Source of the DNA: Girardia tigrina
Taxonomy: Eukaryota
Length of the DNA: 61,582 nt
Reading direction: 5' to 3'
NCBI GenBank assembly: GCA_001938485.1
Contig: MQRK01238663.1
Coordinates: forward strand, 8,001-69,582
A program made the position numbers and the translations under genes. This document shows positions 2,907 to 35,950 of the stretch, piece after piece. The notes under the pieces were generated by a model. The model saw only the letters and a list, made by a program, of their open reading frames with translations, made no database searches and was not told where the DNA came from. Every line of letters starts with the position of its first letter. Positions within the stretch are counted from its first letter, which is position 1.

Positions 2907-3146
2907 AATCATAATTTATAATTAGATATTAGAACGTGTTCAAATTAAAATATTAAATTTATAAATTAGTATTTGTCAGGAAAATGTCGTTACAAAGATC
3001 TAACCTAAACTTTAACAAGAACTTAAACTTTAACTTTAAAATCACAATTAAATACAATTATATACATTATATTCACAGATTTTTTTAATTTCGGGATATT
3101 CTAATAGACTTTTTTGTCAATACTAAAAGCTTCAACTATTTTATAG

Positions 3147-3400
3147 GCTTGGCCAGAGGATGCGCTTGAACGTGTGGCTCTAAAAGCATTGGAAAGTGTA
3201 GATATGGAAGACAAAATGCGCGATGACACAGTTAAAATAGTAAAGTATTTCCATACAAGTGTCATTAATCTTTCCGAGGAATTTTACAAATCCCTCGGTC
3301 GAAAGAACTATGTCACACCGACTTCCTATTTAGAGTTGATTAACAGTTTCAGAAATTTATTAAATAGCAAGCAAGAAGACACAATGAGAGGTAAAAAGAG
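3147..3400 (+). CDS. DNAH12: Dynein heavy chain exon 1 in window ([11 protein letters not shown]...RGKKR)
   Basis: tag| acceptor at 3146, |gtaatt donor at 3401, ends in phase 2. Confidence 0.92.
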
Positions 3401-6400
3401 GTAATTTTTGTTTTTCTAAATGATTTAAGTTAATACAAATTTTACAAAGTCGAAGAAATTTATAATTAGAATCTTTTATAATTCCAAAAGTTGTGAGAGT
3501 TTTACGTTTAGTAAATATAGCTATTATTTATGTAAATTTTTAAGTCATAACCATAACCATTATCATAACCATAACCATTACCATAAAATACAAATTTATG
3601 TTGATTATTGTTCAGAGAGTTATTCAAATTGTTCTTTTTTGACATGGATCAAAACTTAAAAGTTACAAGAGAAATATTGCTGATAAGTTTCCAACTTCAG
3701 CTGTATATACTTTTGTGACTGTGTTGATCATAGATCTACATCAACGTCTGACATAATATGAATTTCGTTACTTAGCTACATATAAAAATAGTGAAGATCA
3801 AGAAAAGCCTAAATTTAAAAAGCATTTAACATAAAATATGGGTCTTTCCTGTTAAATGGGGATTGGTGAAGTTGACATGAGTTCTGCATAGACTTCGTTT
3901 GTGACAACAATTCTCCTACAGAATTTAGAGTAGCATTTTAAAAATTGTTCAAGTGAATTGGAAATCTTTTCTGACAATAGACTTCACGCCTTTTATCTCT
4001 CGGTCGATAAAATTTCTGTTTTTTTGAGTTAGAAAGATTAATCAAAAATTCTAGTTATCCACGGAACAGTCCCCCCCAAGAGTCTCGAATATCAGTCTAT
4101 CGCTGCCGCTTCTTCCCCCTTTCCCGTCAGACAACTACGTAGTATTAGTGAACCAAATATGTCACTACAAAATAAAGAAAAATGTTCTCATTCTCATCAA
4201 TCTTTATGAAGTCAACATATTCACTTGAATAAAAAACTCAGTAATAACATTAATATCACATAAGTCAACCGTCGGATTATCGATAGCCACAAGCGTACCT
4301 GACAGAGTCAGCCCACAAAACATGGTAATAGGTACGCAGCTCTCTGAAATGTTGCAGTTTGCCACTCAAGATTCGTCAAGGGGTTCAATAAGAAGTTCCA
4401 AAAATCCTATTTGACCCAAACACGCTCGCTGGGTAGCTTCGAAGCTGCTAGATGAGCTCAGTCGGTTAAATGTCAAGATATCATGTACCTTCGTTAACGG
4501 TCTGATTTTCGACTACTTTGATCATGACCGATTCCCATTTAAGCATTGTTTGCAATCACAAGTTATTGCTCTAATGAAAGCTTGCCATCTTTCTCGAGAA
4601 TTGGGAGAATATCAAAATATCGAAAGTGGTATTACCAGTTTTACAAAATTTTAGAGGGACCGATACTGGTAATACCGATATTGAAAATATCCGTTATTTT
4701 GCATTTTCTATTGCTTAACTTCTAATGAGTTATATCAAATACATAGTAAAAATATAGCAACATTTTTAAACCTTTGGAAATCGAGTAACAAATAAATGGC
4801 CATTTGAAATTATCATGCATCAATTGGGCAATTGGTATTGGGAATATTGACAATTAGCAGTAGGCCTCTACATCAGTCTTACGAGGCGAAAGGGTCACTA
4901 CATTATAGCTGTGTAATTAAATTAAAAATGCGAATATCCAACAATGAATTAGTTTAGTTTTTATGTTTTAAGTTGAGTGTTTCTTGTAAACAAATGATTT
5001 TTTATGCGAAAAGTTTTTCAAAAACAACGAAGATTCTTCAAAATAAAGAGTTCCTTATCCACAATCTTCTGTCAACGATCTGAAAGCTTTTGGATTTGGT
5101 CAAAAATTTGTTTGGCTTTGATTTCGAAAACTCTTGTTAGGCAAATGTTAACTTTATTGAATGACTCAAAAAATAAAGTATTACATTGACCAGGAAAAGA
5201 CCTTTATTAGAAGAAACAACGTCTATAAAAAAGACAACTTCTACGCAGTTCAAATCTTAAATCTTTTAGTCACTTTGTTTGACCATACCACATCCTTTAT
5301 AAAATTCATAAAAATATTATAATATTTATATACATTTGTGTCTCATGATACTCTAGAAATATAATACACTTTTTAAAATGTTAGAAATCTTTCTAAAACA
5401 ATAACTACAGGGAATATGCAAATATATTTATTATTTTCTACCTTTGATAAAACAGAAAATATTCGATTTTATTTATTTTATAAAGTTTTTTATTTATAAA
5501 ATGAAAATTATTCAAAAATATTTTTGTTTTCCTTTTACGATTTATCGTTATAAATGAATTCCCTTTATAAAAGATATTATTTCTACAATTGGAATTTTGT
5601 TCTTAAATTTTCACAAAGTTATCTAAAAAAATAAACAAAAATAAAATAAATCTTTCTTTCTTTAGGTACGTAAATGGTTTGGACAAATTGGCATTTGCAT
5701 CCGAACAAGTTTCCGACATGCAAATCAAACTTGAAGAATTACAACCTCAATTAGTCCAAGCTAAAAAGGCTAATGAATTATTATCATTGGACATTTCCAA
5801 AGAGTCAATTCTTGTAGAAGACCAACGATTAAAAGTTAAAGCAGAAGAAGAAATCGTCAACGAAAAAGCAGATGCATCAAAGGCACTGAGTGATGAGTGT
5901 AGAGCAGATCTAGCGGAAGCGATTCCAGCTCTGGAAGCCGCCCTTGCAGCGTTAGATACTTTAAGACCTGCAGATATTACAATAGTGAAAACAATGCAAA
6001 ATCCACCGGCAGGAGTTAAACTGGTTATGGAGGGTATTTGTATTATGAGAGAAATCAAACCGGAACGTGTCAATGATCCAAATAATCCGGGTAAAAAAAT
6101 TCTTGATTACTGGGGCCCATCGAAAAAACTTCTTGGTGATATGGCTTTCTTAACATATTTAAGAGAATATGATAAAGATAACATTGGTCTTGCAATTATG
6201 GCTAAAATTCGAAAGGATTTTATCCCTAACCCTGAATTTGATCCAGCTAAAATTTCGCGTGCCTCATCAGCAGCTGAAGGTCTTTGTAAATGGATTTTGG
6301 CAATGGAATCTTATGATCGTGTCGCTAAAGTGGTAGCACCGAAAAAAATTAAATTAGCTCAAGCTGAAGCCGATTTAAAAGAGAATATGGCAAAGTTGAA

Positions 6401-9400
6401 TGAAACGCAAAAGCAGTTACAATATGTCGAAGATAAATTAACGAATCTTAAACAAAAACTAAAGGATACTGAAGATGAGAAACTAAGATTGCAAGAAGAA
6501 GTTGAATTATGCGCCAAAAAATTAGAAAGAGCTAAGAAATTAATCGGAGGATTAGGTGGCGAAAAAGACAGATGGGCACAAGCAGCTGTTAATTTGCAGG
6601 CAATTTATGATAACTTGATTGGGGATGTTCTTCTCTCTGCAGGAGTAATTGCCTATCTGGGACCCTTCACATCTATCTACAGAGATAAATGCCTATCAGA
6701 TTGGTCAAAGTTGTGCAAGAATTACGCAATACCATGTTCTTTAAAGTTCTCTTTAACATCTTGTCTTGGAGAGCCTGTAAAAATTCAAGCATGGAATATA
6801 TTTGGTCTCCCAAGGGATTCTTTTTCCATTGATAACAGTGTTATAGTTGCTAATGCTCGAAGATGGTGAGTTAAAATAGTTTTTTGTTATCGATTTACTG
6901 CAACCATATAGGCCATTGATGATAGATCCACAGAATCAAGCAAACAAATGGATTAAAAATATGGAGAAAGAAAGAGGATTGAATGTAATCAAGTTAACTG
7001 ATTCTGATTTCATGAGAAATCTAGAAAATGCAATTCAATTTGGTTATCCTGTTCTACTGGAAAATGTCGGCGAAGAGTTGGATCCTTCTTTGGAACCCTT
7101 GTTACTAAAACAAGTCTTCAAGCAAAGTAAAACTAATACTTAAAATAATCATGAAGATTTTAAAAATTAAAAAAAATTATAGATGGAGTCGATATGATTC
7201 GATTGGGAGAAAGTATTATCGAATATTCAAAAGACTTTCGATTATACATCACTACCAAGTTACGAAATCCTCATTATTTGCCAGAAATCGCAGTCAAAGT
7301 ATCACTATTAAATTTTATGATCACAGTGGAAGGTCTAGAAGATCAATTACTCGGTATTGTGGTCGCGAAGGAAAAGTAGTTGAATATGCTCTGGAAATGG
7401 AATTAAAATTCTTTTATTAAAGACCGGAACTTGAAGATGCCCGTCAAGAATTGATTATTACCAGTGCCAACAATCGCCGAATGCTCAAAGAAACCGAAGA
7501 CAGAATATTAGCTACTTTATCGGAATCAGAAGGCAACATTCTCGAAAATGAGACTGCCATTCAGATTCTCGATAGCTCAAAAGCGATTTCAGATGACATC
7601 TTGAAAAAGCAAGAAGTAATCTTGTTTTACTCAATTTTAGACTGACAAAAATCGCGCCTACAGACAGCTGAAGAAACACAGAAGAAGATAGACGCGGCAA
7701 GGATGGATTACGCGCCAATCGCTAAACATTCGGCGATTCTCTTCTTCTCCATCACAGATTTGCCTAACATCGATCCCATGTATCAATACTCATTGTCGTG
7801 GTTTGTGAATCTCTATATTAACTCTATCCATGACAGGTACTGCTTTTTATGTTTTCGTTATTAAGATAATAATATTTATTAAATATTTTATTATATTATT
7901 ACTCACAGTAAGCAAATGAATGAGTTGAGTGTCATTCCATTTAAATCCAATTTTATTTTTATTATTTTAAGATTTTTTTCCTTTGCAAAAATTTTTTAAT
8001 GAAATAGAAAATTAGTTATCGATTTTGGATGTACTGTTTATATTTGGTTGTGATAAATGATGACCCGATAGAAGTTTATTATTCTTAGAACATCTCTTGG
8101 CAGGGTTCGCTGCTTCCCTTATTCTACATATTAGAAGCCGGTCAGAACTCAAAAAGTAGATTTCATAAAAAGCTCAGCTTGTTGGCCTCAAGTTACCATA
8201 CATTGCCAACTAACTTTTAGATATATTTATTAAGAATCTACCAAGTCAGCATCTAATTTAATGTGTTTTTACCTGCCGATTGTGAAATAAAGTGAGGTTT
8301 TGAAACAAATTCAATTCATTGCAAGATACAACCTACAAATATGAGAGCCCCATAAGATCGGAGATCGCTAAAATCATAAAAAATAGTCTTTAATAAATTC
8401 ACCTAGGACGAGAGTCCCCTTGATTTTCGAATGCAGGAAATGGCAGGATTGATCACAATAACATATTCATCAAAAAATACTCTGTCTCGTTTAATTGAGA
8501 GATGTGAACCCAAATGTGATTTATTAAAATATAAAAAAGCCGCTCTCTATTTCATCTTCATCATACATAGGGTGTTTATAAAGTCTTTTAACTTTTTGAA
8601 TACGAATATGGGCCTCCCATCTCTTTCAAGAATGGTATTGAGTCTATATGCTCTTTAGATGGTCCACCCAAACCAAATAAGTCTATAAGCTTCTCGATAG
8701 GCCTCCTACGGGGACGTCAGCCTTTCGCTTCGACGCACGCTTTGGCAATCCAGTCAGAAACGACCATTCATGGATAGTAGTCCCATGATTCTGCATCCCT
8801 TTGGCTGTGTACATGGACTTTACACATCCACGAAACGGGCATTTGAAGGTTCCTCTCACAGTTAGATCTGTAAGGCGGTAGTCCAGATGGGTTTCTAAAG
8901 GACTCGCTTCTGACTCTCCGTTTGAAGCAGCATTCAGATCGACGATTGGTACTTGAGTTGCGTTGTCTTCTGGTATCGCGTTCAGTGGTTGGATTCCCTT
9001 ATTCTGATTGTCTGGACTGATTGGTTCTGCTCGGAAAGATTTGGACTAATTGTTCTTCTTCAATTTTGTGCGTTGTTTTAAGATGTCTGATGAGCCATCT
9101 TTTGATCTTGTAGTTCTTTCGGCATAGATGACAACTGAATCCCTCCGGCTCTTCTTGAGGGACTCTTGGTCTATGATCTTGTTTCTCGTGTCGATTCAAT
9201 TCTGTCTGCTCCGCGAATTCCCTGAAACAAGATTCGTTTGAACATTGAAACAGTTTCATCCGCGGTCTGATTAGTTTTGGCATGTCTTCTGATCTCCGCC
9301 CAATTATTCGCCTCTCGCATATTATTGTGTCGATCCTATCTTTCTTCTTGATTTGAGCGCTTTCCTGGTGAATTAATTTTAAAAAATCATCATCAAAGGA

Positions 9401-12400
9401 GGCCGTTTCTCCAAAAATCCATTCCGTGTCGACTCTCAGGCATTCTTTGATTTTTTGCTTCTTTCTTCCTGAGATTTTCTTACCATCTGTCACTGCGGAT
9501 TAAATAACTCTTTTCAGGATCATCTGTCTATTGCCAGTAGCTAAGAGAGCATGGAACAGGAGCCGTCTCTTAGCTAGAATATCCATTGGGTGAGATAACC
9601 CAATTGTGATGGTATCCATTCTGATCTTCTGATCCTTCCTTATCCCTAACACTAGGCGATTACCATGATTGTGTATGCTCCGCAGCTTCTTTACCAGTGT
9701 GTCGGTGGTCCTCCAATTTTCACACCCATAGTATACAACTCTCAATCAATTTTCGCTTGCTTTGGATCGTTAGGTTTGGATACCTCAGGATAGGCATCAT
9801 AGTTCGTAGCTTGTCGTACCATTTCCTTATTCTCTCTCTGATATCTGCCTCACAAGATATTATTGAACCAAGGTGACTGAACTCGGTAACTCATTCGATT
9901 CCAGACATCATCTCGCAACCTGCCGTTTGTATGATCGAGTCACCATTTAGATTAATAATCTTGGTCTTTTCTATGTTGATCTTTAGACCCAGTTGCTGGA
10001 ACACCCCGTTTAGAATATGTAGATTTCTTTTTAACTCATTATAGTCTTTGTCAATGAGATAAAGGTCATCTACATACGCTAAATGATTGATCTTCAGTTC
10101 GGTTCCGTCCTCATTTCGTAATTGTACCCCTCCTGTCATCCCATTTACTTCTGCTAGTTTGAGTACTCTGTCAAACACAATATTAAACAATATCGGTCCC
10201 AGAACACAACCCTGTCTTACGCCTTTGAACATTGTGAACTCATGTTCACCAATATAGCCCTTGAATCCCTCGCGAAATTGAGTAATCATGTTGAGTGTTC
10301 TGCCATTTATCCCCAGTTTCTTTAGGCATATCCAAAGCACATTTCTTGGTACACTATTGAAAGCTTTCTCCAAGTCTATATTGCCGCAAGTAGAGGAAGT
10401 TGGAAGCGCAATTGCACAGCTAAAGAACGGAACAGCTGCAGGAATGAATGGAATAATTCCTGAATTATTCAAATGGAGAGGCCATAATCTTATTTTCAAA
10501 CTGACAAAAATAAATAATTATATTTACACATTTATATATACAATTGTATTATGTTAAAGGATCAAAATCAGTGGTTAGTAACCTTATTTTGTTTGCGTAC
10601 CCCTTGGTACTATATTTCTGTTAAATTCTAATTCTTCTATTAAATAACTGTTTATGATAAATATGTGAAGTTGATTTTATTTCAAACAACGGAAATTTTT
10701 CAAGTTTTCCTAATATAATTTATTGTATCTGATAAGAAGATTATATAAAAACAATACAAGTAAGGACTAAAAGAAAGAAAGAAAATCTAATCTTAAAAAA
10801 TGATCTTGGCCATCATAGTGTAGAAATGAAGCATGAGATTTTACTTGAGATTCTGTCGATTTTTAGTTTGGGATCTATGATCTAAACTAGTTCATTTATA
10901 TGAAACATTCAGAAAAATAATTTATTGTGTAAAAAATTGTATTATAACCATTCGAAAACTTATATTTATATTATTTTCACTTGTTATTTGTTAAACATAT
11001 ATTATAGTTACAACCAAATTGTATTCTCAAATTTCATTGACACTTTCCTTACAGCTCGTCGCTCTGGATCTATAAATTAATGATCATTCAGTACTCGTTT
11101 ACTTAAACATATTTTTCTTTGATTTTTCAAAATGCTAAAATCCAATTCATTTTTATTTAAGATTTCATTTGTATTAAATATTTTAAATTACAATTTTATA
11201 AATAATGAATTAAATAACAGTCGAGGCTAGGATAAACACCACTCTAAAATAATCATACAAAACGTTACAGGAAAATATTCCTCACATTCATCTTTATTAA
11301 ATTCTATCCAGAAATAAACGAATTAATTTGTTAATTATATTTTAAATATATGTAATTTTTAGACATACAGTCGACTCTCGCTAATCCGTGCATTATGGGA
11401 CCGAGAAAATGTGTTTCGACGAATTATCAAATTTTACCGGGTTAAAGAATGTTGAAAAATGTTTTTACAAATTAAAAAAAAATCAGAATGGCAAGATCTT
11501 TTATTAATAATAATTCGCCCGAAACACAATTTGTTCATTTCCATATAACACGGATTAGCGAGAGTCGACTGTAACTATAACTAGTAAATCAAAAAAATTT
11601 CATATCCATTCTTTATGTGGGCAGAACTTGGCCAACAGAAGTTTTTTGTTACCTTTTGTAGAAGGGAAAATTACTCTTACATTTTGTAATAAATTAATTA
11701 CGTTATTAGTAACTATTTAAATCTTTTATAGAAAGGAAAATTTCATACCACAATTTTTTTCAACTCAATTTTGCAATTAAATAGTTACTAATAACATAAT
11801 AAATTTATTATAAAGCATGGAAGGAATAAAAACTAAACATTTCTATATAAAGCAGTGTAAACATTTGTGGATAATCGTAAAACGTTTTTTGCAAAATGTT
11901 TTTTTTATTTTGATCAAATTTTCGCATTATCATTTATTGTCATCGAAAGTGATTAAATGTACAAAGTTTGGAGAAAATTGATTGTATAGAGAAAGTAAGC
12001 TAATAACGAATGGAAAAATAGAAGGTAATACTAACAAAAGAATATTTTATAACTGTTTTTTTTAAATAAAAATAATAAATAATTGTTGTTTTCTAATTTC
12101 CTACCGTTTTGCATTTGAGCTGGAAGCGCTAAGGTACCTTAGAATGTTTGAGTTACAAAAAATAAATGACATTACATAAATGGAAATATTTTCTTTTCTA
12201 ATAAATCAATTTCTAATCAGGATTGGAGATTTAGGCAAATTGCTTGGTCAGGCAAATTGATTACCTAAGACAGAGGGATTAAGGACCCTTAGTTGACTGA
12301 TTGAAAAGAAGTAATTAATGAAGAAATAGTTATTTTTACATGTTGTCTTACCCCCAAAAAAATCATGTAAAAATAAATAAAGGAAAATAAAAATAACACA

Positions 12401-15400
12401 GATAATTAGTATATTTATAGGAGTTCCCGTTCAAATGAATAAGTTTTGCAACCGAATGACTAATTGTTGCAACCAATGAATAAGTTTTGTAATTTTAAAT
12501 CAATAAAAATACTCATAACACATGGAACTTAAAAATTATTATTGTATTTTATTTATTTTTATCTTAATAATTATTTAATGAAATCTCCGAATTAAATTTA
12601 TAATTTCCGTATAGTTATTTATTGATCGCAGATTGATTTACAGATTGTTCATTTCGTAAAAGGGTAGAGAATATAGAAAATATAAAAAAGAAATTAGAAA
12701 ATGCTAACTAGTTTAACGAATAATGACACTTACCGGAAAACATACAATAAAAAATAACGGTTTCATTCACTATTTCAAATAGTGAAATTATTTGGATTGT
12801 ACATTAATTTTGGATTTGATATACGATAACTTTTTTTAAATCACTGATATTAAAATTAATTGAAATACGAATTTACATGTTTTTTTACATTAAAAAAGAA
12901 GATTATTACGAAATTTACATGTCAGATATACGTGATATCAAGAAGATTCACGGTATTACTGTGAAATTTCTTTATACCAACCCGGGTGTCGTACTGAGTG
13001 TGTACCAACATGTGGGGTGTATTTACACCAGTGAATTTTTTATTCCGAATAATAGGGACATACTTACGAAAACCCTTCATAATTGTATTTCGAACTCATA
13101 CCTGGTTCAGTGGAATGCGCAGAATAATGTTGCATATTCCACCTCACCACTGTATGCTGTTCGACTTACAAATGCTGAATGGGAATTTATTCATAAGGCC
13201 AGATCATACACGATCCCTGTAAGGTATCGTCCCTGGATGGAATATCACGTACCCTGCAGCAGAGGTTGTCCTGAAGATGAAACTCTTGCGCATGTACTTG
13301 TGAGTTACAATTCTATGATTATTTTCTGGAATGCAAGACACAATGCTGTGCTTGATATTGTCGCAGCCGAACTCAGGATGCACTCTGGGGCGGTTCTTCA
13401 CGTGAATGAGACATGCCGATACTACCCCTCAACGGCGTTGATCTACAGGTTTATTTTGAAGATAGGAATATTTTATTGTTTATTGATGTCAAGTGCCCTT
13501 ACGATATCATGCGCAATCTTGAGATTGCTGACATCAGGAATGTTGAAAAGTATTTTTATCTTCTTCAGGAGATTACTGCGAGGTGCGGGTTTACAGTTAT
13601 CTTAGATACTTTCATTGTTGGTGCACTTGGTGCATGGATGCCCAACAATGAAACTATCCTTAATGATTTACGTTTAGGGCACAGGATTAAATCTATTACG
13701 AAAGCCTACGTGGAGTCCAATATCCGATGGAGCGCGAGACAATGGACGGCATTCGAGGACCCGCGGGAGAGACGAAACGTGCACACCTTTGCAGACGAGA
13801 TCCACGACCCGACAGCCACGATGGAGACGCTACAAGAGGGGCCAATCTTTGATGATTGTGACTCTGACTCGGTCTTTGGGGCTGATCATGGTTTGTGGTG
13901 ATGTCCTGTTGATGATGCTGAGGATTCATGTTGACAGAGAGATTGTGTTGTATGATGTGTTATTAGGTTTTGACCCCACATCGGTGCGTTTACTGATAGT
14001 GGCAACTGTCCGTTATGACAGAGGTACTTAATTGAGGATCACTGACCCCACTCTTATGTGTTCACAGAGATGGTACCGTTATATGGCGGAGGTAGGGACC
14101 CCTTTTTTGTATGTGATGGATCTCTCGTGTCATAACTCAGTATTCGTTGGCTTGATAATTGCTGCAGCGCCTGATCGGTCATGAATTCTGAGATTGACGA
14201 ACAATCGCAATAATGGGCCTCTCTAAAGGTACTGCCATGAAACCCGATGAACCAGTGCTCCCCGCTCAATTCCCCAATCAGACGTACCGGAAAGCACTAA
14301 AACTAATTGTGGAAAAACCCTGTTTATATTAATAAATTTTGTCCATAAATTACTATAAAAAGCAGATTTAAAAATGCAATTGATTGCAGCACATATTCAT
14401 TTGGTTGCAAAACTTATTCATTTGAACGGGAACCCATATATTTTCTAAATTAGTTACAAACAGACTAAAAAATTAATTTACCAAGTGATCATTCAGGCGG
14501 CCAGAAAACCACAATGTCGCTGAGAATAGAAAACAATACTTTGTGTTATTAAAAAATAGAGATCACTCCAGAAATTCATGAAGAAAACAGAGATTAAAGA
14601 AAGAAGACAAAAACAAACAAATTTAAGGATTCGATCTATTTAAAATTACTTATTCTACAGCCCCGAAAGTCACTTGTACGTGTGAATAGTAACAGTCATG
14701 TGTTTTGATGTTCCTCCAATCATACGAGGAGCGTTCCGAAAGTAAGTGGAAAAAAGGGAGACGACACCACAAGAAAGCATTTATTGAAGGAATACAATGT
14801 CATTCATCATCCTCATCACTGTCAAGGCAGGTAAGGCAGCGATTTGCATTGATGGTCTCCGACACTTTTTCCACATTTTCTACCGTGCTCGTCGTTGCGG
14901 ACGTCCACTCCTGTCCGCGTCGTCCAAGGATTCACGTCCATTTTCGAATTGATGCACCCAATTGTAGACGGCAGACTTTTGCAGGGCTCTTCCTTGAAAC
15001 ACATTTGATAAGCGGCGCACAATGTCAGACACTGGAGTATCCTCTTTCCAAAGGAAAAAGATGATGGCACGCTGAGAACGTACTGCGTCTTCCATGTGTT
15101 AAACAAAAATGAAAACACTTCCTATGACAGTTTCTTCTATGCTGTTCACATGTTGCATGAACTAATGCCACTTTTACTCGATTTCTATTGGCTGGTAAGT
15201 ACATCACGCCACCACGCCATCTGTCCCTCTGTAAGATGCACACACACGCGCACACCCGCATATAAGTATTTCCACTTACTTTCGGAACGCCCCTCGTAGA
15301 ATCAGTTGTATTTAAGTTGTATTTAATCAGTTGTAACATTCTTTATTAAGAAGGAAGGACTATTATTGAAAGTAAACTCTAAATAAAATGTTGCATATTT

Positions 15401-18400
15401 TTTATTGTAATGCTTCTTTGTGAGGTCAGTTTAACTATATCCTGTCAAAGATTGAAAAGGATACAATAAACATTGTTTGAAAAGTTTATTTATTAATTTA
15501 AAGATTGTTAATTCTATTTGGTACTTGCGATAAAACGATTATTTTTTAGCAATAAATCTAAAATTCTTGAGAGAAGATCTAGATATCTAAAAGATCATTT
15601 CCAGTTCAATATTTATGAAAACGTCTGTAGATCTTTGTTTGCCCGCGATAAATTGTTGTTTTCCTTCAAGCTCTGTGCGGATCTTATGATGTGAGTATTT
15701 GGGTAGCACATTTATGTCGCCGTCACGGATATATTGTTTGATTTTTATTATTATAGTATAGATTTATGCAATTAGTTAGCGCTCAATATCAATTTATTTT
15801 TTATATTTCCCGGAGGATTTATGTGATAAGACTGATTTTGTACCGAATATTTGTTATTTGATTTATCACATCTAGATTTTAGTGATTATTGTTTTATAAT
15901 TCATTTATAGCAACAAATCGAAAATCTTAGAAAAACGGTTACGATACCTCAGCGATCATTTTACTTACAGTCTTTACTCAAACGTGTGTCGGTCACTGTT
16001 TGAAAAAGACAAACTTTTGTTCTCGTTTGTCTTGTGCAGTAAAATCTTATCGTTAGTCGCTTTTGTTGATGCGAAGCTTTTTCTCTAATTTCTTTTTATC
16101 GTTTGTTTTGGTTTTGATTGTTTTTACATGCTTTAACTTGCTGTGTTTAACAACCGTTTGGTGTTGATTTAACTTATTTATTTTCAGGAAAGCAGGTAAT
16201 GTTTTCTTATTAACAAAAATGAGAGATAAATATTTTAAATTATTTTTTGTGTTAAATTATTAATATACTTGAACCTAAATTACTTTTTACTTCTACGGAT
16301 TCAAAGAATAGATAAAAAAATTAAGGAAATAATGTGAACTATAATGCTCTTTATTTCTAAAGTTTTATCCATTTTGAAACTTATCTGTCCAAAGACGATA
16401 TTAAGAACACTAATATGATTTTCAATACTTGTATTTAAATCACAACTAGTTAGACTTCGTTCTTGGTTGATAAATTGTAATTTTAGTTTCTAAATATCTA
16501 GTTATTCCAACAAATTTAAATCACAATTCTTTAAAAATTATTTTCAAAAATATTTTAATTCATTTAAAATATTTATCGATGGTTACCGGATTTATCGGAC
16601 TATAAACCGCGGCTTATATGAAAAAAAGTATGAAAATTAAAAAAAATGGTTAGACTTATACGCGTGTGCGACTTATATAAAAATAAAAACATCAAAATAT
16701 AAAAACAAAACCAATAATTTAATTTTAAGATTATTCGATTTCCTCGAATCCATCAAAATCTTCATCATCTATTATTTCAAATGTTTCGAAAATGTCCAAA
16801 AATTCCGTTTGGATTTCTTGTAAATCTTTATCCTCACTTCCAGTTTCAATTTCTGAATCATCACCACCTTCGATATTTTCATCATAAGTTTGAATCCCTG
16901 CTTTCTTAAATACATTTTTAATACACTGTGGTGTAACATCTTCCCAGCTTTTATCAATCCAATCGCATATTTTTGAATATGTCGCTCTTTTGATTTTCAC
17001 CGTTTTGTTGTAAATGTGACAACCATTGATAATCCAATTTTCCCAATGTATCTTTGGCTTAGATTTGAACGATTTGTTAACTGATAGATCAAGTGGTTGA
17101 AGGCTTTTAGTGAGGCGACCAGGGATCACTGCAAGTTCAGAATATTTTTTGACTTCATTTTTAACTTCCTCAGTAAGATGACATCTAGCAGAATTGTATA
17201 TTAAAAGTGATATTAGCTTAAAAAGGAATCATTTCTTTTTATCCAAATTTTTTGTATCGATTTTTTTCATTATTTCACTATTTGACCATCCATTTTTATT
17301 GCCTTCAACAATAATTCCTTTTGGAAAATTTTCTTTGGGCATTGTTAGTCTTTTAAATATCACCATTGGTTTAAATTTTATTCTATCGGCAGTTACAGTT
17401 TATGTAACTGTAAAATTATATTTTTCATTTCTGGTTGTTTTGATCAGAATTTCTTTTTTTCCTTTTTCATCAACTGTCCTTGTATCCGGAATATCGAAAC
17501 TAACAGAAACTTCATCCATATTCCCAAGATGCTTCAAATTGATATCTCTCTTTTATCTTTAATAAAAAGTAAAAATGATTCTTTTTTTCTTCTCAATCGG
17601 CTGGCAACGATTGTCCGACTGAAGTTACTGCTATCATGCTTAAATTATTTCTTTTCATAAATCTTGTGCACCAACCATTCGTTCTTTTAAAATTTTCTAT
17701 ATTAAAATCATATTTTGCCATTTTTTTCGCTGTTAATCTAATATCAATTGTAGAAACTTAAAACCCTTTCTCCCTTTCTCAAATTATTTTTTTCTCAATT
17801 TAACTTTTCTCAATTTTAAATTCAAATTATTTTAATAAAACAAAAATAATTAAAGTCAAAATTAAAATAATATTAATTTAAATTTAATGATTTCTTCATT
17901 TGCATAATTTAAAATAAGTTTTTGATTCAAGTTTTCAAGTCACCAAAATATGCGACTTATACGCTAGTGCGACTTATACGCTGTTGAATTTAATTTTCAA
18001 AATTTAAAAAAAATTGGGATGCGACTTATATGCGAGTGCGACTTATAGTCCGATAAATACGGTAAATAAATCTTTGCGTTACAATTCACTATTTAAATAT
18101 GTTAAGTCACAAAAAATATCGATTTTAAATATTTTGATTAAAATATTACTACATAATTATTGATTAAAGTATTTTAATTTGAAGTTGTTATTTACATTCA
18201 AAATCGTCCAACGGTTCAAAATAATCAAAATATTAATCTTCCATCTGAGTAGGAGAAACACAATCCTACAAACAACATACCACGCACAACATACAATAAA
18301 CAATATTCAGAAATATTCCTCACTGACAATATAATTTTTTTCTGAAAAACATTTTAGTTTCATAGTATTGGTAATGTGGAAAAAGTTCAAATCCAAAATG

Positions 18401-21400
18401 TATTTTATTTTAATCTTTTGAATCGCAAGACATGTTCTAGAACAGCAGAAAATACCTTTGTTTTTGGCATATTCTAGTGCAAGGAACTCCAATCCTGGAA
18501 CATAATTTGAATCCCGATATTAAAAATACATTTTCATTATTCTAAATCAAGAGGATTGTCATTTAATTAAAAATACTTTCCACTTTTTGAAATGGTGATA
18601 GTGATGTGGATCTTACTTTATTAAATATCACTTGATAATAGAGTAATTTTGCCTGCTTTAAGAACTAAATCCTCGTTAATCGACAAATATTCGACATGAT
18701 CTGTAAATAACTACATCTAATACAAATTATAGTCCGTCCCTAAAGGTTTGTTCAATGCAATTAGGCCATTCCTAAAGATTTAGAAATAAGATAATACCAT
18801 TTCTAAAACCGATGAATCAATTGATTTTATGAAAGATATGAGCATGTAAATGATAATTTTTCCAGAGTGTTATCATGTAACTTAGAACGTACATTAATCC
18901 ATTAGTATTCATGGGAAAATAAAAGTCTTTCCGATTCCATGAGTTTAAATGGGTTACTCTATCGCGAGCACAGCAACGGTCGACCGATCACTAAATGAGA
19001 ATGATTACGAATTGACATTCTTTTCAAAGTTTGTATTCAATGCACTATTTTCTAGTGTACATGCAGACCTTCTGTTGATACACCGACGCATTTCAAGATG
19101 CTTTGGCACGGATAACTTTGTGTATTTGGCCAGTTTCGTTTTCTATAGTAGTACTAGATTCCTTCTTTATTAAAAGGAGTAAATTTCTTGGTCATCATAA
19201 TCAAGAAATAAAACATTTTTCATAAAATTTGTGCGGTATTTTTCATTCACAAACCAGTAATCCTGGGATTTCGGGAGATATATTTATAGTTCCGGAGAAT
19301 GGGATCTTGGGATTGGAGGCTCTAACTAGAACATCTTGATCTGCTTTTATATTGCTCACCACATTACGTGAATTATTTATATTAAACAACATTTTTAATT
19401 TGGTTTTATTTAATGAAATCAATTTATAAAAACGATTTTTCATCCCGATAATGAACGAAAGCAGTGACTCCAAACCTGTATTCTATACAATGTAAGTGTT
19501 CCGTTAGATAAACTACGGATACAATTGATGAAAATCACTAACATGAGCGGCAAAACTCAATGAATTCCTTCTTTTACCAGAATGTTAAATAACTTTATTT
19601 AATTCGAGAAAATTTATTGACATAACCCAAATATTAAGTTTTCCTTTAGCTTTTCCTGAACTATCATGTACATGAAATGTGCTTATGAGTTCCATAATCT
19701 GAGAGGATTTTAGGATGTTCCGTGTGAAGTATAAAATTTGGATGGGAACTACTAAGTACAAAGAAGAACATTTTAACAATATTTATTTTTAAATGCAGGA
19801 ATAAATTTTAAAGATTATATGTAATATACTTGTTCAATTGATAATATTTGATAATAAATATAATAAATAATAATAAATACACAATTAAATCATTTTGTCA
19901 CCAATTTCAAAGATATTAAAAGAGACCGTAAAGCATAACTTAAGCTTCAATTGAAAGCAAGTTCAAACTACTTCAGAACTACTTAGGAGAATGACGAGCA
20001 AAGGTTCGGTAGACTCTCCTATAACGACCTCAACAATGATGAATTTTTAATTAATTGACCGATTTATACCAGAATCTACTCTAAATGTTTACAATAAATC
20101 TTCTTTTTACTTCGAAAATCGTTCTAATATTTCTGTCATTATGGATATAAAATTGCGTTAAAGCAACGTCAGTAAAATACGGATTATAATTGCGGTAAAT
20201 TCCAATACTTTTTCGATCTTTAAAAGTTTAATATTCTTTCTTTAATCAGATCTTAACTGAAAAAATGTTTGAAAATAATTGATGAATGTTATTACTTAAT
20301 TTAATTTTTAAAATAGATTTTTCGGATTTCTCATTTTTGTATCTAATATTAATATCAAAGGCATTGAACGGATTTATTTTTACAAAAATTTGAAATTTGA
20401 TGGTCTACTCTCAGTTACCCTCGTGAGAAGTGGTTGCAACATCAATATCTGAATTCATTTTTTAACACCAAAATTTATTACTATAACAACAATTCAAATA
20501 TTTAAAAAAATTTTATGTTAATTTAATTATCTCGCCACAAATTAATCTATTAAATTCTTTTCGATTCAATTTTTAAAATCTTGCAAATTTATTAAATAAT
20601 TTTCACATTAAAACTAAAAATTTATTTTAAAATTTATTTAAAATTGTATCATAACTTCTATTAAAATATATAAATTATTATGACAGTAAAAATATTTTTA
20701 TTTATAAATAAATATTTAATATTTAATGGTTTTCTTATCATTTTTAATTTTAAGATATTTAATAGATATATTAAAAAGATATTTTTTTTTATTTTAAATA
20801 GATATTTAATTTTTTTATGATTTTCTTTTATTATATCATTTTTATTTTTTAAAATATTTAAAAAACACATTAAAAACATATTTTATTTTTAAATACGTAT
20901 TTGATTTTTTTAATAGTTGTTTTATTATATTATTTTTAATTTTAAAATATTTAATAAGCATATTAACATTAAAATATTTTACCTTTTAAATTAAAAAAAT
21001 AATAAATTATTCTGGCGAGATGCAAATTTAAATTAACCCATCATAACCATGTTAACCAAGATGGTGCCCATCAGCTATGTCTACACATCTTCTAATCTCG
21101 ATCAAATAATTCCTTTTGGAATGTCTATATGATTCCCTAAAGATTTCGAGTCCAGAAATAGAATTTGGCGTTTATCTGAGAGTTCAATGCATTTTAGTCG
21201 AAACATAATACAATTTTCGTCTTACTAATATCTTCCAAAGGCTTTTAACATTTTTTAATTTACTATGACAACATATCCGAATAAATAGGCCATATTATTT
21301 CTCCTTTGGATCATTTAAAATTATTATTTGATATTGATTACCTTTCACGAATTTCCTGAACCAATTTGAAACTGTCTGTAGCGTATTAATGTTTCATATA

Positions 21401-24400
21401 GTTTCTGATGCTCAGGTTCATGATACGCATCTTTTAGTTTAATCTACCAACAAGGAAAATAAAACGAAAACAGTTTTTTATAAGATTTTCATAATTTTCA
21501 TTTTTCTTGTCCTTTTCATTAACAAAGTAAATAAATCTGTTCAATAGTTTTGAAAAAAAATAATATAGCATTAATTTTAATTTCATTCTTTTGAAGCAGC
21601 CTTTTAATATTGCAACTATGTTTAGATCAAAAGGAGAATTAGAAACCAATGAATATCTGTTTTTGTTAACCGGAGGTGTCGGTTTAGAAAACAAATTGGC
21701 GAATCCAGCTCCATCATGGTTGTCGGATAAGTCATGGGATGAGATTTGTCGCTTGAGTGATTTGAAAGAATTCAAGAATTTCAAGGAACATTTTAGTGGC
21801 CATTTAGAAGATTGGAGAGCATTTTACGATAGTAAAGATCCTCACGATGCCAAACTACCAGAACCCTGGGGTTCTAAATTAGATACATTTAAACATTTAT
21901 TGGTTCTGCGTTGTATAAGACCCGACAAAGTTATTTTTAAAACATTTTTTCAACTTGTAATTTATTATTTATTGTAACAGATCGTGCCTGCTATAACAAA
22001 TTATGTTAAAGAAAAACTCGGCAAAAAGTTCATTGAACCACCACCATTTGATTTGGGCAGAAGTTTCCAAGATTCTCAGTGCTGTGCCCCTCTAATTTTC
22101 GTGTTATCACCAGGAGCTGATCCAACTATGGCATTGTTAAAATTTGCCGAAGACAAAGGTTTCGGTGGTAGTAAATTCAATTCCATTTCTCTTGGTCAGG
22201 GTCAAGGACCGATTGCATCACAAATGATTATGGAAGCGAAACGAGAAGGTACTTGGGTAATGTTACAAAATTGCCATCTAGCCGTCAGTTGGATGACAGC
22301 GATGGAAAAGATTTGTGAGGAAATGACACCAGAAAATACAAATACCGATTTTAGGTTGTGGCTAACCAGTTATCCATCTCCAAAAGTTCGATTATTTAAA
22401 TTTTAATATTCATACCTTTCTTTTAATGTCACATTCTATAAATTCTTCATAATTGTACTTTTATAAAAATTATTTTGCTTGACCTGAAATTATTGAGATC
22501 GATTAAATTTAGAATAAAAGAAGGATTGTGCGTCTGTAGAAATACCAACCATCGACAACATAATATTCTTCGTTGTCAATGACCAACTGGCAATGATCCA
22601 CGAGCTTCTGTAGTTCATAACTCTAGGTTGTTTATTTGGTGTAGCATCTGTAGCTCGAAGTTTTCCATTTTTTCATCTTTGAAAACTTCTTTGTCCAAAA
22701 CTCTACTTATTTACGAAAATAACTACAGATTAGACGTTTAAATCTTTAGCATTAGTGATAGCATGGATGGACAGATTCCACCACGTATTTCTATTAGGTT
22801 ATCCTACATTTGACTTGCATTTTCTTCAAGGCTAATTTTCACGTACAAGTTCACGCACGTCTTGCCTATTGTGTTAATAAAAATTTACAATGACGTATTG
22901 GGCTGCAAAAAAAGTTAATCTTTTCAGAAACATTAAAAAAATATAACTAGAATATCTTTAATAGAAGGGAAAATTTATATTACATTTTTTAATATTGTTA
23001 CTACAGTAGATACCGCTTAAAGAGAATATTTTTGGGACTTGAAAAAATGTTCTCTATAACCCATATTTCTCTTTAACAGATACTTTTTTATAAGGATAAT
23101 TTTTAAAAAAATATCAAAAAAAACTTTACTAATCAACACATTTATTTTTTAAAAAAAAAGTTCCAAAAGTTAAAAAAAAACCAAAAAGTTCTCTTTATCC
23201 GATTTTATTCTCTTTAAGCAAGTTCTCTATAAGCGAAATCTACTGTATTTATTAATACGTTTTTATCTTTACTTGTTTGCGTAATATAAACTACTTATAA
23301 TTTATAAGTAGATCTTCCTCAATTAATTTTGTTTTAGAACTCCGATGGGACCGTCTTTTCCCATTCAGAGACCTTAAAAAGTTTTTTTGGTCAAATTTTC
23401 ACTTTATCATTTATTGTCATCGAAAATGAGTAGTTTGGATATAATTGATTGAGTAAAAGACCTTCAAAATTTTTTTCGCATGTATATAGAAAGCAAGCTA
23501 CTAAAAAGAATGAAAAAATGGTCTTATTTATTTCCGGTTACCTCTATCAAAACGATGTTTCGCAAATTTCAACGCATTTGGTTCATAAATATCACTGACA
23601 ACATTTTGTTCATAAAAATGACAATAAATATTAATAAACTAAATCGCAAATAGAATAAAAATGTCAACTTAAAGTAAGATAAAATTTATAAGCATAAATC
23701 AGATTATATAAAATAGAAAATTCTGGAAATAATTAATTTTTATATTTTACAAAGGAATTATTTTTTATTAAAACTATATGAAAGATGTTTTTAAATTTTT
23801 GTTTTTAAACTCGCAAAATATTTTTTTGTGTTAACGCTAATACGCTAACGAGAGTTATTTACACAAGAAGGATTTCGACAATTTAAGGAATAAATATGGA
23901 TAATATTTGTGGTATGGTAATCTGAGAGTCAAGGATTCACTATATGGGATGTTTTGGTGATCAAATTCCTCCAAAGAACAAAATAGACATAATACTCTCT
24001 TCAAATGGAATTGACTGTCCTAAACATTTATTTGCTTCATTTATTGCGACTTATGGTCACTGAATACGTATTTATGATTGGATCAGTCAGTTCAACGAGT
24101 TACCAATTAGTGGTTGATGATGAGAAATGTGTTCGGTTCAGTGAGATTTGAGACCAGGAAAAAGAAGAGTTCCAAAGTTGTGGTGGAAGTATTGCCAGGC
24201 AGATATCGCCATTTTGGAGAAATATGGAGACTGTTATTATCACATAAATGTGATTTACAAACGAGGGAAATGTCTGAGTGAATTTTTTCCTGTGAAAACA
24301 ATACCGTCAAGATGTGGTCTGATATCTAGCATCACCAGTCACAGTGTGGCCATCTCTACCGTTTTTTTTTGAAAAATATAATTCAATCAAGTCTTTCAAC

Positions 24401-27400
24401 GACATAAGCTTTGTTGAGACATGTAACCTGATCCGAAAGATAAGGTATCCGCTTGAGATGTTGCAAGATAAAGAATCAGATCACAATAGCAGTCATCGAA
24501 GGAAGGGGATTTCAGCTTTCCAGTCATCTTTCTTTACTGTCCCTATCTCGCATGAAGTGATCCTCACCTCTTACACGTTCTTAACATGCGTATCTGAGGA
24601 AAAATCTATCAAAATCCAGATTTGCTGATGGATTAGCTGAACACTGAAAGACGTAATAAGGAATAATGATTCCATGCCCAGATTATTATTTTACTAAAAC
24701 ATCAAGTTTCTTGCTTAAAGTTTTCTGGTTTATTCTACGTATTTACTAAAATTATTTAAAAATTATAAAATTATTATTTTACGAAATTATTTTTTCAAAT
24801 AAATTTCCAAAATATTCATGCATATTATTAAATTAAATGGGCACAAATTATTTACGTTTTTATAAAGAGACATAGAGACATTAAAATTATAGAGACAATA
24901 TTAATATTTAAAAAGACATTTCTATTGTCCTTTCTTATTTTGCATAGAATTTCGTTGGTTGAAATCGAGACATTTTGGATTTTAAAACTATTTATTCAAG
25001 CCGTATTCAAAATATAAAGTCTCAATTTATAATTTCCATTTCGATTTTCAAATGTCAGTATTTCTTGTAATAAGGTTTCATAAATTTTAATAATCATGTA
25101 AAAGAATGTATTTTTTATGTTTTTGCTTATATTCAAAATTAAAAAAATAATGTAATTAAAAAAAAATTGTTAAAAAATATCTTTAAAATATATTTTGCAA
25201 AGAAAACACGAATAACATTAGCATATTTCAGTTTCCTGTTACGGTTCTGCAAAACGGAGTCAAGATGACCAACGAACCCCCTACAGGCCTTCGTCAAAAT
25301 CTTCAGCAATCATTCATGAATGATCTTATTTCTGAACCAGAGTTTTTCAATGGTTGTCCAGGAAAAGAATCCGTCAGTTTTTTTAAAGAATTTTTTTCGA
25401 ATATAATGTTGATTTTATAGACGTTTGAAAAGCTGTTGTACAGCTTATGTTTCTTCCACGCTCTGGTACAGGAACGACGAAAATTTGGTCCAATGGGATG
25501 GAATATTCCTTATGGGTTTAATGATTCTGATTTGCGTATATCCGCTCGGCAGCTGCAGATGTTTGTCAACGAATATGAACAGGTTCCGTTTGATGCCATT
25601 TCCTACCTGACAGGAGAGTGTAATTATGGCGGTCGAGTGACGGATGATTGGGATCGTAGATGTCTTATGACAATTTTAACAGATTTTTATAATTCTCATG
25701 TAATCTCGGATGCAAAGTATAAATTTTCTCCCAGTGGAATTTACATTGTGCCTCCCAAAATGGAATACAACGAATATATTGAATTTATTAAAGTTAGTTT
25801 TATGACTATACTTATGCATTCATGAAATCTCTTTTTATAACAGTCTCTATAAAGAATAATATTAATCAATGTCATTATTTATAAATTAGAAACCAACAAG
25901 ATGAACCTTTCGGTATTTCAACTTTATTGTATAGGAATTCTCAAAGATTTTCTTTGGATATTGTCATCCTAAAATTTCTAAAAAAATTGGGACATCTCTG
26001 GACGAGGACTCTCGAAAATAAAGTCCGAAATATTTATCAGTTTAACATATTTCTTTACTTCAACAATTGATATTTTGACTTTAAATTTTTACAACTTACA
26101 CAAAACATTCATTTAAACCCCAACAAATACCAGAATCTTTGGTTTTGTTTTTTTTTCTGTACTGTGAGAAGTAGTCGCAATATCAATATCGGAATTCATT
26201 TTTAACTCCAAAATTTATTTATTATAAAACAATTTTCAAACAAATTTTTCAACTATTTCTTTAATTAATAATTAATCCTCCGATCTCTATTTTCAAATAA
26301 TTTCTAAATTATCTCAAATTGCAATCAAAATAATATTTAATTTTTAAAACATATTTAGGAAAATTAATAATTTACGTATATTTAGTTTTTAATGGGAATA
26401 TTTATTTTTTTTAATTTGTTGTTTATTTTAGCCTTTTAAAATTTTGTTTTTCAAAATATTCTGTTTTTTTAAATTCTGCATTTTTTTATAAAAAAAACAT
26501 GTAATTTATTTATAGTATTTTAAATTTTTTTGCAAATATTGGGTTGTTGCATAAGTTCCCGCCGTTACATGAAACTATTTGTTCTACAAAGACTTTTTGA
26601 ATTCTGGCGAAGTGTTATATACCATTAGAAAGTCCGTGCTATGCTCTACAAGATTAAAGTAATCGTTTTTGCCTATATTATTTTTTTGTCTTTTTTTAGA
26701 ACCGTCAAATGGATTGTCAAGTCGACAAAAAAATCGCATTTTCGACACCTCCTTTTTTTCGACTTTAATCGAGGTCAAAAAGCGAGTGAAGCTACCAGAG
26801 ATATTTGTACCGTGTGCGGAGAGGACGCTATAGCTGAAAGAACTACTCGGGATTGGTTTGCCAGGTTCAAACACGATAATTTCGACCTCAACGACGCTCC
26901 TCGTTCCGGAAGACCAGTCGAGATGGACGAGGACCAACTCGGGGATCTTTTGAAGGAAGATGGCNGCCANACATGCAGAGAATTGGCCGAAAAGATGAAT
27001 TGTGATTTTGCGACAATTTCACGCCATCTTCAGTCGATGGGTTTCACTCAAAAGCTTGGAGCTTGGGTCCCGCACGAACTCACCCAAAATCAGAAGGATA
27101 AGCGACTTTCCATTGCTGCTCAAAATCTCGCTCGACACCAAGGAACCCAATGGCCACAGGCAACGTTTCTTATACAGAATCGTCACTGGAGACGAGAAAT
27201 GGTGTCTCTATGTGAATACGAAGCAAAGGAAAGAGTGGATGAGTCCTGGAGAGAAGCCTAAGCCCAGGATCAAGAAAGATCTGCACCCGATGAAGACAAT
27301 GATTTGCGTATGGTGGGATTGGGAAAGTCTAATTCACTGGGAAATGCTTGGCAAGAACATAATAGTAGAAAAGAATCTCTATAAAGCCCAATTGCATCGA

Positions 27401-35910: not shown

Positions 35911-35950
<40 letters not shown>

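What the first reader, a model, noticed from the sequence alone, without database searches (positions are those of the whole stretch)
15550..16051. Tandem mutually exclusive exon pair in the dynein motor ring (AAA5 lid, just after the buttress)
Seen: two exons 220 nt apart, both exactly 141 nt, phase 2/2, stop-free and with canonical AG/GT sites. Either one alone joins exon 6 (ends 7836) to exon 8 (starts 21626) in frame. By hand count 32 of 47 residues are identical, while synonymous sites are strongly diverged (AAT/AAC, TCT/TCG, CTT/TTA, AGA/CGG), which suggests an old duplication with both copies under purifying selection. Known: this segment is a folded helical subdomain between the buttress and AAA6, so double inclusion should be structurally intolerable. 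Inference: the gene makes two motor isoforms (RSLFEKDK versus RSLFARDK; TYSLYS versus QFNIYE), perhaps tuned for different cilia types or sperm. Mutually exclusive exons are known in some dynein heavy chains, so whether this cluster is undescribed needs a literature check. Neither exon is in the ORF track.
Basis: partly seen in the sequence, partly recalled or inferred. Interest (0 to 1): 0.88.

Follow-up and report, generated by a model that had tools for sequence, protein, structure and literature searches.

The report
Swappable exon in ciliary dynein motor
A flatworm gene for one of the motors that beat cilia (DNAH12) holds two interchangeable versions of one small piece of the motor ring and splices in one at a time; the same pair turns up in snails, clams, lamp shells, moss animals and tapeworms but not in the starfish, amphioxus or sea anemone examined, so it is an old, apparently undescribed way of making two motors from one gene.

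Summary
Confirmed. Exons A (15550-15690) and B (15911-16051) are both 141 nt, AG/GT, phase 2/2, with 31 of 46 full codons giving the same residue and synonymous sites saturated. The gene is the DNAH12 (inner-arm dynein a) ortholog of a probable planarian. RNA-type contigs show upstream-A-downstream and upstream-B-downstream joins in one run, A in a second study, and no A-B join. The cluster is not planarian-specific. Sixteen other genomic loci carry it in the same order, among them Bugula, Lingula and Taenia; snail RefSeq isoforms X1/X2 differ only here. Amphioxus, starfish and Nematostella have one B-type copy. A-type exons form one well-supported clade (22 of 24) and replace residues 92-97% conserved in related dyneins (T>Q, E>A, D>H). 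The exon encodes two helices between the buttress and AAA6. Spacer introns are about 11-fold enriched in the RBFOX element TGCATG, though not in this window. Cell type and mechanical effect are untested. I found no paper on this cluster; the known dynein case is in Schistosoma cytoplasmic dynein. The scan had not noted it elsewhere in this genome.

The parts
7664..7836 (+). Constitutive upstream exon (end of buttress and the helix carrying YSLSWF); donor GTACTG, phase 2
   Evidence: tblastn of Biomphalaria DNAH12; boundaries read from sequence; its last 25-30 nt are the loose ends before A and B in RNA contigs
7837..15549 (+). 7.7 kb intron with a reverse-transcriptase remnant and another retroelement-like ORF
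15550..15690 (+). Exon A, the derived alternative (FQFNIYE ... SLFARDK); 141 nt, phase 2/2
   Evidence: spliced in runs X5 and X14; in the starred clade of first-position exons
15691..15910 (+). 220-nt spacer intron; no TGCATG, many AG dinucleotides, no unusual folding
   Evidence: no RNA coverage and no A-B joint
15911..16051 (+). Exon B, the ancestral-type alternative (FTYSLYS ... SLFEKDK); 141 nt, phase 2/2; seen in all four runs
   Evidence: 93% identical to the single amphioxus exon
16052..21625 (+). 5.6 kb intron with a DDE transposase remnant
21626..21929 (+). Constitutive downstream exon; acceptor TGTTTAG
   Evidence: its first 30 nt are the loose ends behind A and B
3111..39055 (+). 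Part of the DNAH12 gene in the window (about residues 2460-3997 of the Biomphalaria ortholog, to the stop); three more exons lie upstream on the same contig
   Evidence: only this one region is duplicated

Best explanation
SHOWN: a functional mutually exclusive exon pair in DNAH12, the heavy chain of inner dynein arm a. Either exon is spliced alone between the same neighbours, giving two motors of equal length. SHOWN by comparison: B is the ancestral state. INFERRED (strong): A arose once by tandem exon duplication in an ancestor of flatworms, molluscs, brachiopods and bryozoans, changed several deeply conserved residues and has kept them since. Some lineages later added a third copy. SHOWN on a surrogate model: the exon is a loop plus two helices that follow the buttress and precede the AAA6 large domain. 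INFERRED: these helices belong to the AAA5-small/AAA6-large unit whose rotation moves the buttress and so switches microtubule affinity, so swapping them (acidic residues lost at the start of the second helix, one gained on the first) retunes or repurposes arm a in a subset of ciliated cells. INFERRED (weaker): B is the default, and A is switched on by a cell-type splicing factor, in many lineages an RBFOX protein bound in the spacer. Nonsense-mediated decay cannot police double inclusion, because both exons are 3n. My odds: real exclusive pair 0.95; single spiralian origin 0.8; cell-type-specific functional tuning 0.65. Cell type for A: ciliated neurons or muscle 0.35, sperm 0.3, one class of multiciliated epithelium 0.25, other 0.1.
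For: Spliced joins for both exons and none between them. RefSeq isoform pairs of identical length that differ only inside this exon: Biomphalaria XP_055865511.1 / XP_055865512.1 and Physella XP_059163826.1 / XP_059163834.1. Same 141-nt AG/GT cluster, A-type first, in 16 other genomic loci including Bugula, Taenia and Lingula. Single B-type copy in Branchiostoma, Asterias and Nematostella. 22 of 24 first-position exons in one clade, 99/97; all 24 not rejected, p-AU 0.16. Position profile: T18 is 24/24 in B but Q in 15/24 A; E31 is 24/24 in B but A in 22/24 A; C23 becomes E/D in 20/24 A; D33 becomes H in 21/24 A. Those columns are T 69/71, E 65/71 and D 69/71 in related dyneins. dN/dS of A between close species 0.1-0.26. 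Helices 233-253 and 258-275 of the model, pLDDT about 80-92, between Pfam AAA_9 and D6. AAA5S/AAA6L rotation drives the buttress (PMC4879348). TGCATG 2.85 per kb in spacers against 0.26 elsewhere; 27 seen against 6.1 in dinucleotide shuffles; top hexamer by number of loci.
Against: Contigs show presence, not absence, so a minor A+B form is not excluded, and their depth is a poor measure of level. No tissue labels were available. The tree has only 46 columns; the two cestode first exons fall outside the clade, and a window-specific duplication is not formally rejected (p-AU 0.062). No ecdysozoan or gnathiferan gene was examined, so the origin could be older (protostome). The window's spacer has no TGCATG, nor do Bugula or the held-out Lingula locus. 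The window's A keeps D33. No coordinates were returned, so contacts were not measured. E31-to-A also occurs in a few single-copy dyneins (3 of 71).
Confidence: 0.8

Rival explanations
1. Exon A is a decaying or neutral duplicate that is spliced in by leak; only B matters.
For: A is absent from two of four runs and has lower depth where present. It departs from residues conserved elsewhere and evolves faster than B.
Against: Intact frame, length and splice sites in every locus seen across at least four phyla. The same derived residues are shared between phyla. dN/dS is 0.1-0.26 with saturated synonymous sites. Modelled as RefSeq isoform X1 in two snails.
Confidence: 0.04
2. The exons are tandem cassettes that can both be included, giving a 47-residue longer motor, as many public gene models draw it.
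For: A+B is in frame. Predicted proteins of Biomphalaria, Pomacea, Nucella, Sinanodonta, Plakobranchus, Lingula and tapeworms carry both.
Against: No A-B joint in four runs; in X5 both forms run straight into the downstream exon. The RefSeq snail isoforms carry one copy each. No non-spiralian DNAH12 has an insert of this kind. In the double model one copy drops below pLDDT 50, though the alignment gave that copy no support.
Confidence: 0.04
3. The exon was duplicated several times independently, and the A-type likeness is convergence.
For: Extra third copies did arise separately in bivalve-like loci and L010. Cestode first exons are not in the clade. p-AU 0.062 for window A plus window B.
Against: Same order everywhere; four shared derived positions; starred clade of 22 whose inner groups follow taxa (gastropods together, bivalves together, Bugula with L022).
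Confidence: 0.12
4. The swap is real and regulated but changes a surface for an outside partner (assembly chaperone, neighbouring axonemal complex, C-terminal domain) rather than the motor's own cycle.
For: The changes are mostly charge swaps (E>A, D>H, C>E/D, S>K) while the hydrophobic core positions stay. DNAH12 has an assembly role in mammalian sperm (PMC11949491).
Against: The changed residues are conserved across DNAH3, DNAH7, DNAH12 and fungal or protist dyneins, which have different neighbours; that suggests an intra-motor role.
Confidence: 0.3
5. Assembly artefact: two haplotypes or a paralog's exon placed in tandem.
For: Fragmented 1.43 Gb assembly of 255,254 contigs.
Against: Only 58% nucleotide identity between the copies; both are joined to identical flanking exons in RNA; same arrangement in other species.
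Confidence: 0.005

Closest known systems
Mutually exclusive exon in Schistosoma mansoni cytoplasmic dynein heavy chain DHC1 (Pillmann et al. 2011, PMC3228551)
   Same: Two equal-length homologous internal exons with split codons at both ends, in a flatworm dynein heavy chain.
   Different: Different gene (cytoplasmic, not axonemal class 7). Given there as a software test case. Its position in the motor was not checked here.
Unlisted alternative motor-domain splice forms in the 3,272-sequence dynein survey (Kollmar 2016, PMC5100056)
   Same: [quoted passage not shown]
   Different: Names only the DHC1 example. No mention of DNAH12 exons in the text, and no supplement was held.
Mutually exclusive exon clusters of arthropod muscle myosin heavy chain (PMC3228551; PMC3912159 listed)
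   Same: Working analogy: exchangeable motor-domain segments fine-tune mechanochemistry for different cell types from one gene.
   Different: Myosin rather than an AAA+ ring. Several clusters per gene there, one here. The functional effect is established for myosin and untested here.
DNAH12 / inner dynein arm a (Walton et al. 2023, PMC10266980; Yang et al. 2025, PMC11949491)
   Same: Ortholog by sequence. Exon B matches residues 3179-3224.
   Different: Vertebrate, amphioxus, echinoderm, hemichordate, acoel and cnidarian proteins seen here have the B type only. Axonemal position is inferred from orthology.
RBFOX-controlled mutually exclusive exons in C. elegans egl-15 and unc-32 (PMC3585155)
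   Same: UGCAUG in the intron upstream of an exon represses it (egl-15 5B), and RBFOX selects the neuronal exon in unc-32. Orthologous spacers here lie upstream of B and downstream of A.
   Different: Only motif enrichment here, with no binding data; the motif is missing from this window's spacer.

Membership tests
Mutually exclusive exon cluster (criteria of PMC3228551) | Neighbouring internal exons of the same length | tested here: met
   141 and 141 nt
Mutually exclusive exon cluster (criteria of PMC3228551) | Same reading frame and compatible splice sites | tested here: met
   phase 2/2, AG/GT, both in frame
Mutually exclusive exon cluster (criteria of PMC3228551) | Homologous, encode the same structural region | tested here: met
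   31 of 46 identical; both match DNAH12 3179-3224
Mutually exclusive exon cluster (criteria of PMC3228551) | Each exon spliced alone into transcripts | tested here: met
   runs X5 and X14; snail RefSeq X1/X2
Mutually exclusive exon cluster (criteria of PMC3228551) | Never both together, never both skipped | tested here: inconclusive
   no A-B joint in four runs, but contigs drop rare forms; skipping could not be seen on the stretch laid
DNAH12 / inner arm a (class-7 dynein) | Closer to DNAH12 than to DNAH7 or DNAH3 | tested here: met
   63-68% to named DNAH12s against 54-58% to DNAH7/DNAH3; another locus of this genome (L003) is the DNAH7 ortholog; PDB 540 against 478 bits
DNAH12 / inner arm a (class-7 dynein) | Shared exon boundaries with other DNAH12 genes | tested here: met
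   same 141-nt exon in Branchiostoma and Asterias; paralogs L003 and L005-L007 show no matching AG/GT pair
DNAH12 / inner arm a (class-7 dynein) | N-terminal tail that sets the axonemal position | not tested
   the tail lies outside this contig
Exclusion by nonsense-mediated decay | Double inclusion shifts the frame or adds a stop | tested here: not met
   A+B is in frame and stop-free
Exclusion by steric interference (under 50 nt from donor to branch point, PMC5740500) | Very short spacer or distal branch point with an AG-free zone | tested here: not met
   220-nt spacer with many AGs in a gene whose ordinary introns are 44-58 nt; plausible elsewhere: 54 nt in L018, 68-70 nt in L013 and L016
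Exclusion by competing RNA pairings (Dscam docking-site type) | Conserved complementary intronic elements | tested here: inconclusive
   only AT-rich chance-like inverted repeats; folding z -0.93; no close genomes available for covariation
RBFOX-regulated exon | TGCATG downstream of the enhanced exon or upstream of the repressed exon | tested here: inconclusive
   absent from this window, Bugula and Lingula; enriched about 11-fold over the pooled spacers, 7 of 13 after collapsing close relatives
RBFOX-regulated exon | Binding, and a splicing change on knock-down | not testable with these tools
   needs CLIP or RNAi data

The most novel reading that the evidence does not exclude
A single exon duplication at the base of Spiralia created a second, cell-type-specific form of inner dynein arm a, switched by RBFOX-type splicing. 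Its conserved substitutions in the AAA5-AAA6 helices change how ring closure is passed to the buttress. It would then be a natural variant, older than 500 million years by the usual dating of these phyla, for ciliary motor tuning, and a molecular trait of spiralian cilia.
Probability: 0.35. Interest if true: 0.8.

Novelty: new variant of a known kind. Interest (0 to 1): 0.6.

Why it matters
How animals tune motile cilia for different jobs is usually explained by gene duplication of dynein heavy chains (PMC5100056). Here one axonemal motor is diversified by a conserved exon switch in the part of the ring that couples ATP-driven closure to microtubule release. Planarians glide on cilia and take RNAi well, and the two exons are only 58% alike in DNA, so each isoform can be knocked down or probed separately. 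The pair is also a candidate shared derived character for Spiralia. It shows too that many public DNAH12 models in molluscs, brachiopods and tapeworms probably join both exons in error.

Tried and rejected
Third copy or other duplicated exons in the window: none. RNA-structure control of exclusion: no signal. NMD and, for this species, steric hindrance: do not apply. The Lingula locus, fetched after the motif was noticed as a held-out test of the RBFOX idea, has no TGCATG in its spacer (one GCATG). The first homolog search with a short ORF gave only 17 hits. The top hit (Schistosoma bovis) is a DNAH7 with a repeated annotation, not this cluster. P0070, a divergent intron-poor plankton dynein, has no cluster. 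A paper search for the accessions of unnamed loci found nothing, so their taxa rest on similarity or memory. The AlphaFold double-inclusion model is confounded by alignment coverage. Ten paper searches in all; none returned a description of this cluster. Left out by rule: the joined (spliced) window protein was not sent to any search or fold; exons were searched one by one by reference, and Biomphalaria database proteins served as fold surrogates. No human contig was fetched or compared. P0009, which equals the human segment, and the human-named proteins were not followed. N stretches were left as they are.

Full report
Observation. The two exons are as described: 15550-15690 (A) and 15911-16051 (B), 141 nt each, AG before and GT after, 220 nt apart. 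Each has one base of a split codon at the start and two at the end. Either one joins the exon ending at 7836 to the exon starting at 21626 in frame; so do both together and so does skipping both. Of 46 full codons 31 encode the same residue, and 22 of these differ in DNA. pS is 0.96 and pN 0.26. There is no third copy in the window and no second locus with the pair in the genome.

Gene and organism. Exon B and the long stalk exon match DNAH12 best among solved structures (residues 3179-3224 and 2521-2920). Over all window exons, identity is 63-68% to named DNAH12 proteins and 54-58% to DNAH7 or DNAH3; a different locus of this genome is the DNAH7 ortholog. DNAH12 is inner dynein arm a in the human axoneme (PMC10266980). 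The genome is 1.43 Gb and AT-rich, and its COX1 copies read correctly with ATA as Ile, as in the flatworm mitochondrial code. I take it for a dugesiid planarian. From memory the assembly size fits Girardia tigrina, which I could not verify.

Transcripts. I laid four runs from four studies on 15350-16250. Run X5 holds two 198-nt contigs with identical flanks, one through A and one through B; their loose ends are the last bases of the upstream exon and the first 30 of the downstream exon. X14 holds A joined to the downstream exon (its contig starts 9 nt inside the upstream intron) and B joined on both sides. X4 and X7 show B alone. No joint from A to B was listed and the spacer has no coverage. 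Contig depths were 17.9 (A) against 40.6 (B) in X5 and 3.3 against 13.1 in X14. The tool warns that such depths are a poor measure and that rare forms are dropped, so I use them only to say that B looks like the commoner form. Independently, RefSeq has isoform pairs of equal length that differ only inside this exon in Biomphalaria glabrata and Physella acuta.

Spread. A search with exon A returned exon-sized ORFs of two types. Their contigs, a metagenome scan and named genomes gave 16 further genomic loci with two or three 141-nt AG/GT exons in tandem, A-type always first. Named ones are Bugula neritina (bryozoan), Taenia solium (cestode) and Lingula anatina (brachiopod). Predicted proteins with both copies add gastropods, a bivalve and other tapeworms. 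Several JGI loci are, from my memory of the accession series, gutless marine annelids; this is unverified. Branchiostoma belcheri and Asterias amurensis have one exon with the same two boundaries, B-type; Nematostella has the B-type sequence with only the upstream intron. Hemichordate, acoel, lamprey, frog and mouse proteins are all B-type. No ecdysozoan gene was available.

History and selection. In a tree of 62 exon peptides, 22 of 24 first-position exons, the window's A among them, form one clade (99/97); B groups with the single-copy exons. The two long-branched cestode exons fall outside, but holding all 24 together is not rejected (p 0.16); pairing window A with window B has p 0.062. With 46 columns this is support, not proof. 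A-type exons share T18 to Q (15 of 24), C23 to E or D (20 of 24), E31 to A (22 of 24) and D33 to H (21 of 24), while B has T and E in all 24. In 71 related dyneins these columns are T 69, E 65 and D 69. The window's A has Q18, E23 and A31 but keeps D33. Between close species A has dN/dS of about 0.1-0.26. A therefore shifted once and was then conserved.

Structure. The joined window protein was left out of all searches and folds by rule; Biomphalaria isoform X1 (residues 2990-3720) served as surrogate. The model (mean pLDDT 81) matches the DNAH12 chains of sperm and airway axonemes best. After the two long buttress helices and two short ones, the exon forms a loop, a 21-residue helix, a four-residue turn and an 18-residue helix, between Pfam AAA_9 and the AAA6 P-loop domain. 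E31 and D33 sit at the start of the second helix. AAA5S and AAA6L rotate as a unit on ring closure and move the buttress, which slides the stalk (PMC4879348). That the exon's helices belong to this unit follows from their position; contacts could not be measured because no coordinates are returned. In a model with both exons one copy falls below pLDDT 50, but the alignment gave it no support, so this is weak.

How exclusion may work. Decay cannot enforce it, since A+B is in frame. The 220-nt spacer is four to five times this gene's short introns and has many AGs, so steric hindrance is unlikely here, though spacers of 54-70 nt in other loci would allow it (criterion from PMC5740500). No RNA pairing stood out. 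Across 16 loci the spacer after A holds 27 TGCATG in 9.5 kb (2.85 per kb) against 0.26 per kb in the rest of the loci and 6.1 expected from dinucleotide shuffles (maximum 13 in 300). It is the commonest hexamer by number of loci in the first 200 nt, with none in the 200 nt before A or after B. After collapsing close relatives 7 of 13 loci have it. RBFOX proteins repress an exon from its upstream intron and pick neuronal exons in nematode clusters (PMC3585155); enhancement from the downstream intron is from my own knowledge. Both effects would favour A over B. The window, Bugula and the held-out Lingula locus lack the hexamer, so for this species the regulator is unknown.

Comparison and novelty. 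It is a member of the known class of mutually exclusive homologous exons, and it probably works like the clusters that tune the myosin motor. The published dynein case is in Schistosoma cytoplasmic dynein (PMC3228551). Kollmar's survey mentions unlisted motor-domain splice forms (PMC5100056), so the cluster may sit uncommented in that dataset, and RefSeq models it in two snails. I found no paper describing it, its spread across Spiralia, its conserved substitutions or the motif enrichment; the library lacks most subscription journals.

Verdict. Real, expressed, ancient and apparently undescribed. The class is known and the function is untested. Interest 0.6.

Noticed in passing
window:16188-16195: Eight bases (or three, using a second AG) between a good acceptor with an upstream TTTAAC and a GTAATG donor, 136 nt after exon B: a candidate microexon. 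None of the B contigs includes it. In run X7 a low-depth contig matches 16195-16235 without a difference.
   Followed up: partly
L100:43537-43557 (Asterias amurensis); P0451/P0320 (Ptychodera): Starfish and a hemichordate have an optional 7-8 residue insert right after this same exon; in Asterias it is a 21-nt AG/GT microexon. The site is alternatively spliced in deuterostomes too, by another route.
   Followed up: partly
L099:34249-34390 (Branchiostoma belcheri): Four TGCATG within 143 nt downstream of the single exon, against 21 in the whole 41 kb gene; no second exon copy was found. The RBFOX sites may predate the duplication.
   Followed up: no
L013:11809-12160, L016:11734-12083, L023:1414-1843, L010:6756-6896: Third copies: B-derived in bivalve-like loci (spacers 68-148 nt), and a strongly diverged middle exon in L010, whose organism is unidentified (closest to Bugula, 71%).
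   Followed up: partly
P0198, P0415, P0297-P0302, P0422, P0464-P0468: Public protein models (for example KAK6963637.1, XP_013387188.1, CDS39708.1) carry both exons in tandem, probably an annotation error.
   Followed up: partly
window:5667-6866: This exon aligns over its full length to the DNAH12 stalk region and to solved microtubule-binding-domain constructs, whereas PMC11949491 describes DNAH12 as lacking that domain; that claim may rest on the short 3092-residue annotation.
   Followed up: no
window:9894-10517 (-), 16734-17228 (-), 26629-27754 (+), 29525-30445 (+), 31838-32873 (+): Transposon remnants in the dynein introns: reverse transcriptase (RVT_1), DDE_1 and a mariner-type transposase by Pfam; the last two are Tc1/mariner-like by eye only.
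   Followed up: partly
window:12820-13898 (+): Two overlapping ORFs without a Pfam hit; a CxxxC...H motif and a nuclease-like tail recall the C-terminal end of an R2-type retroelement (from memory).
   Followed up: no
window:47191-47625 (-) and 48281-48952 (+): A synaptobrevin-like ORF (below Pfam's cut-off) and a divergently oriented 224-codon ORF without a Pfam hit, downstream of the dynein gene.
   Followed up: no
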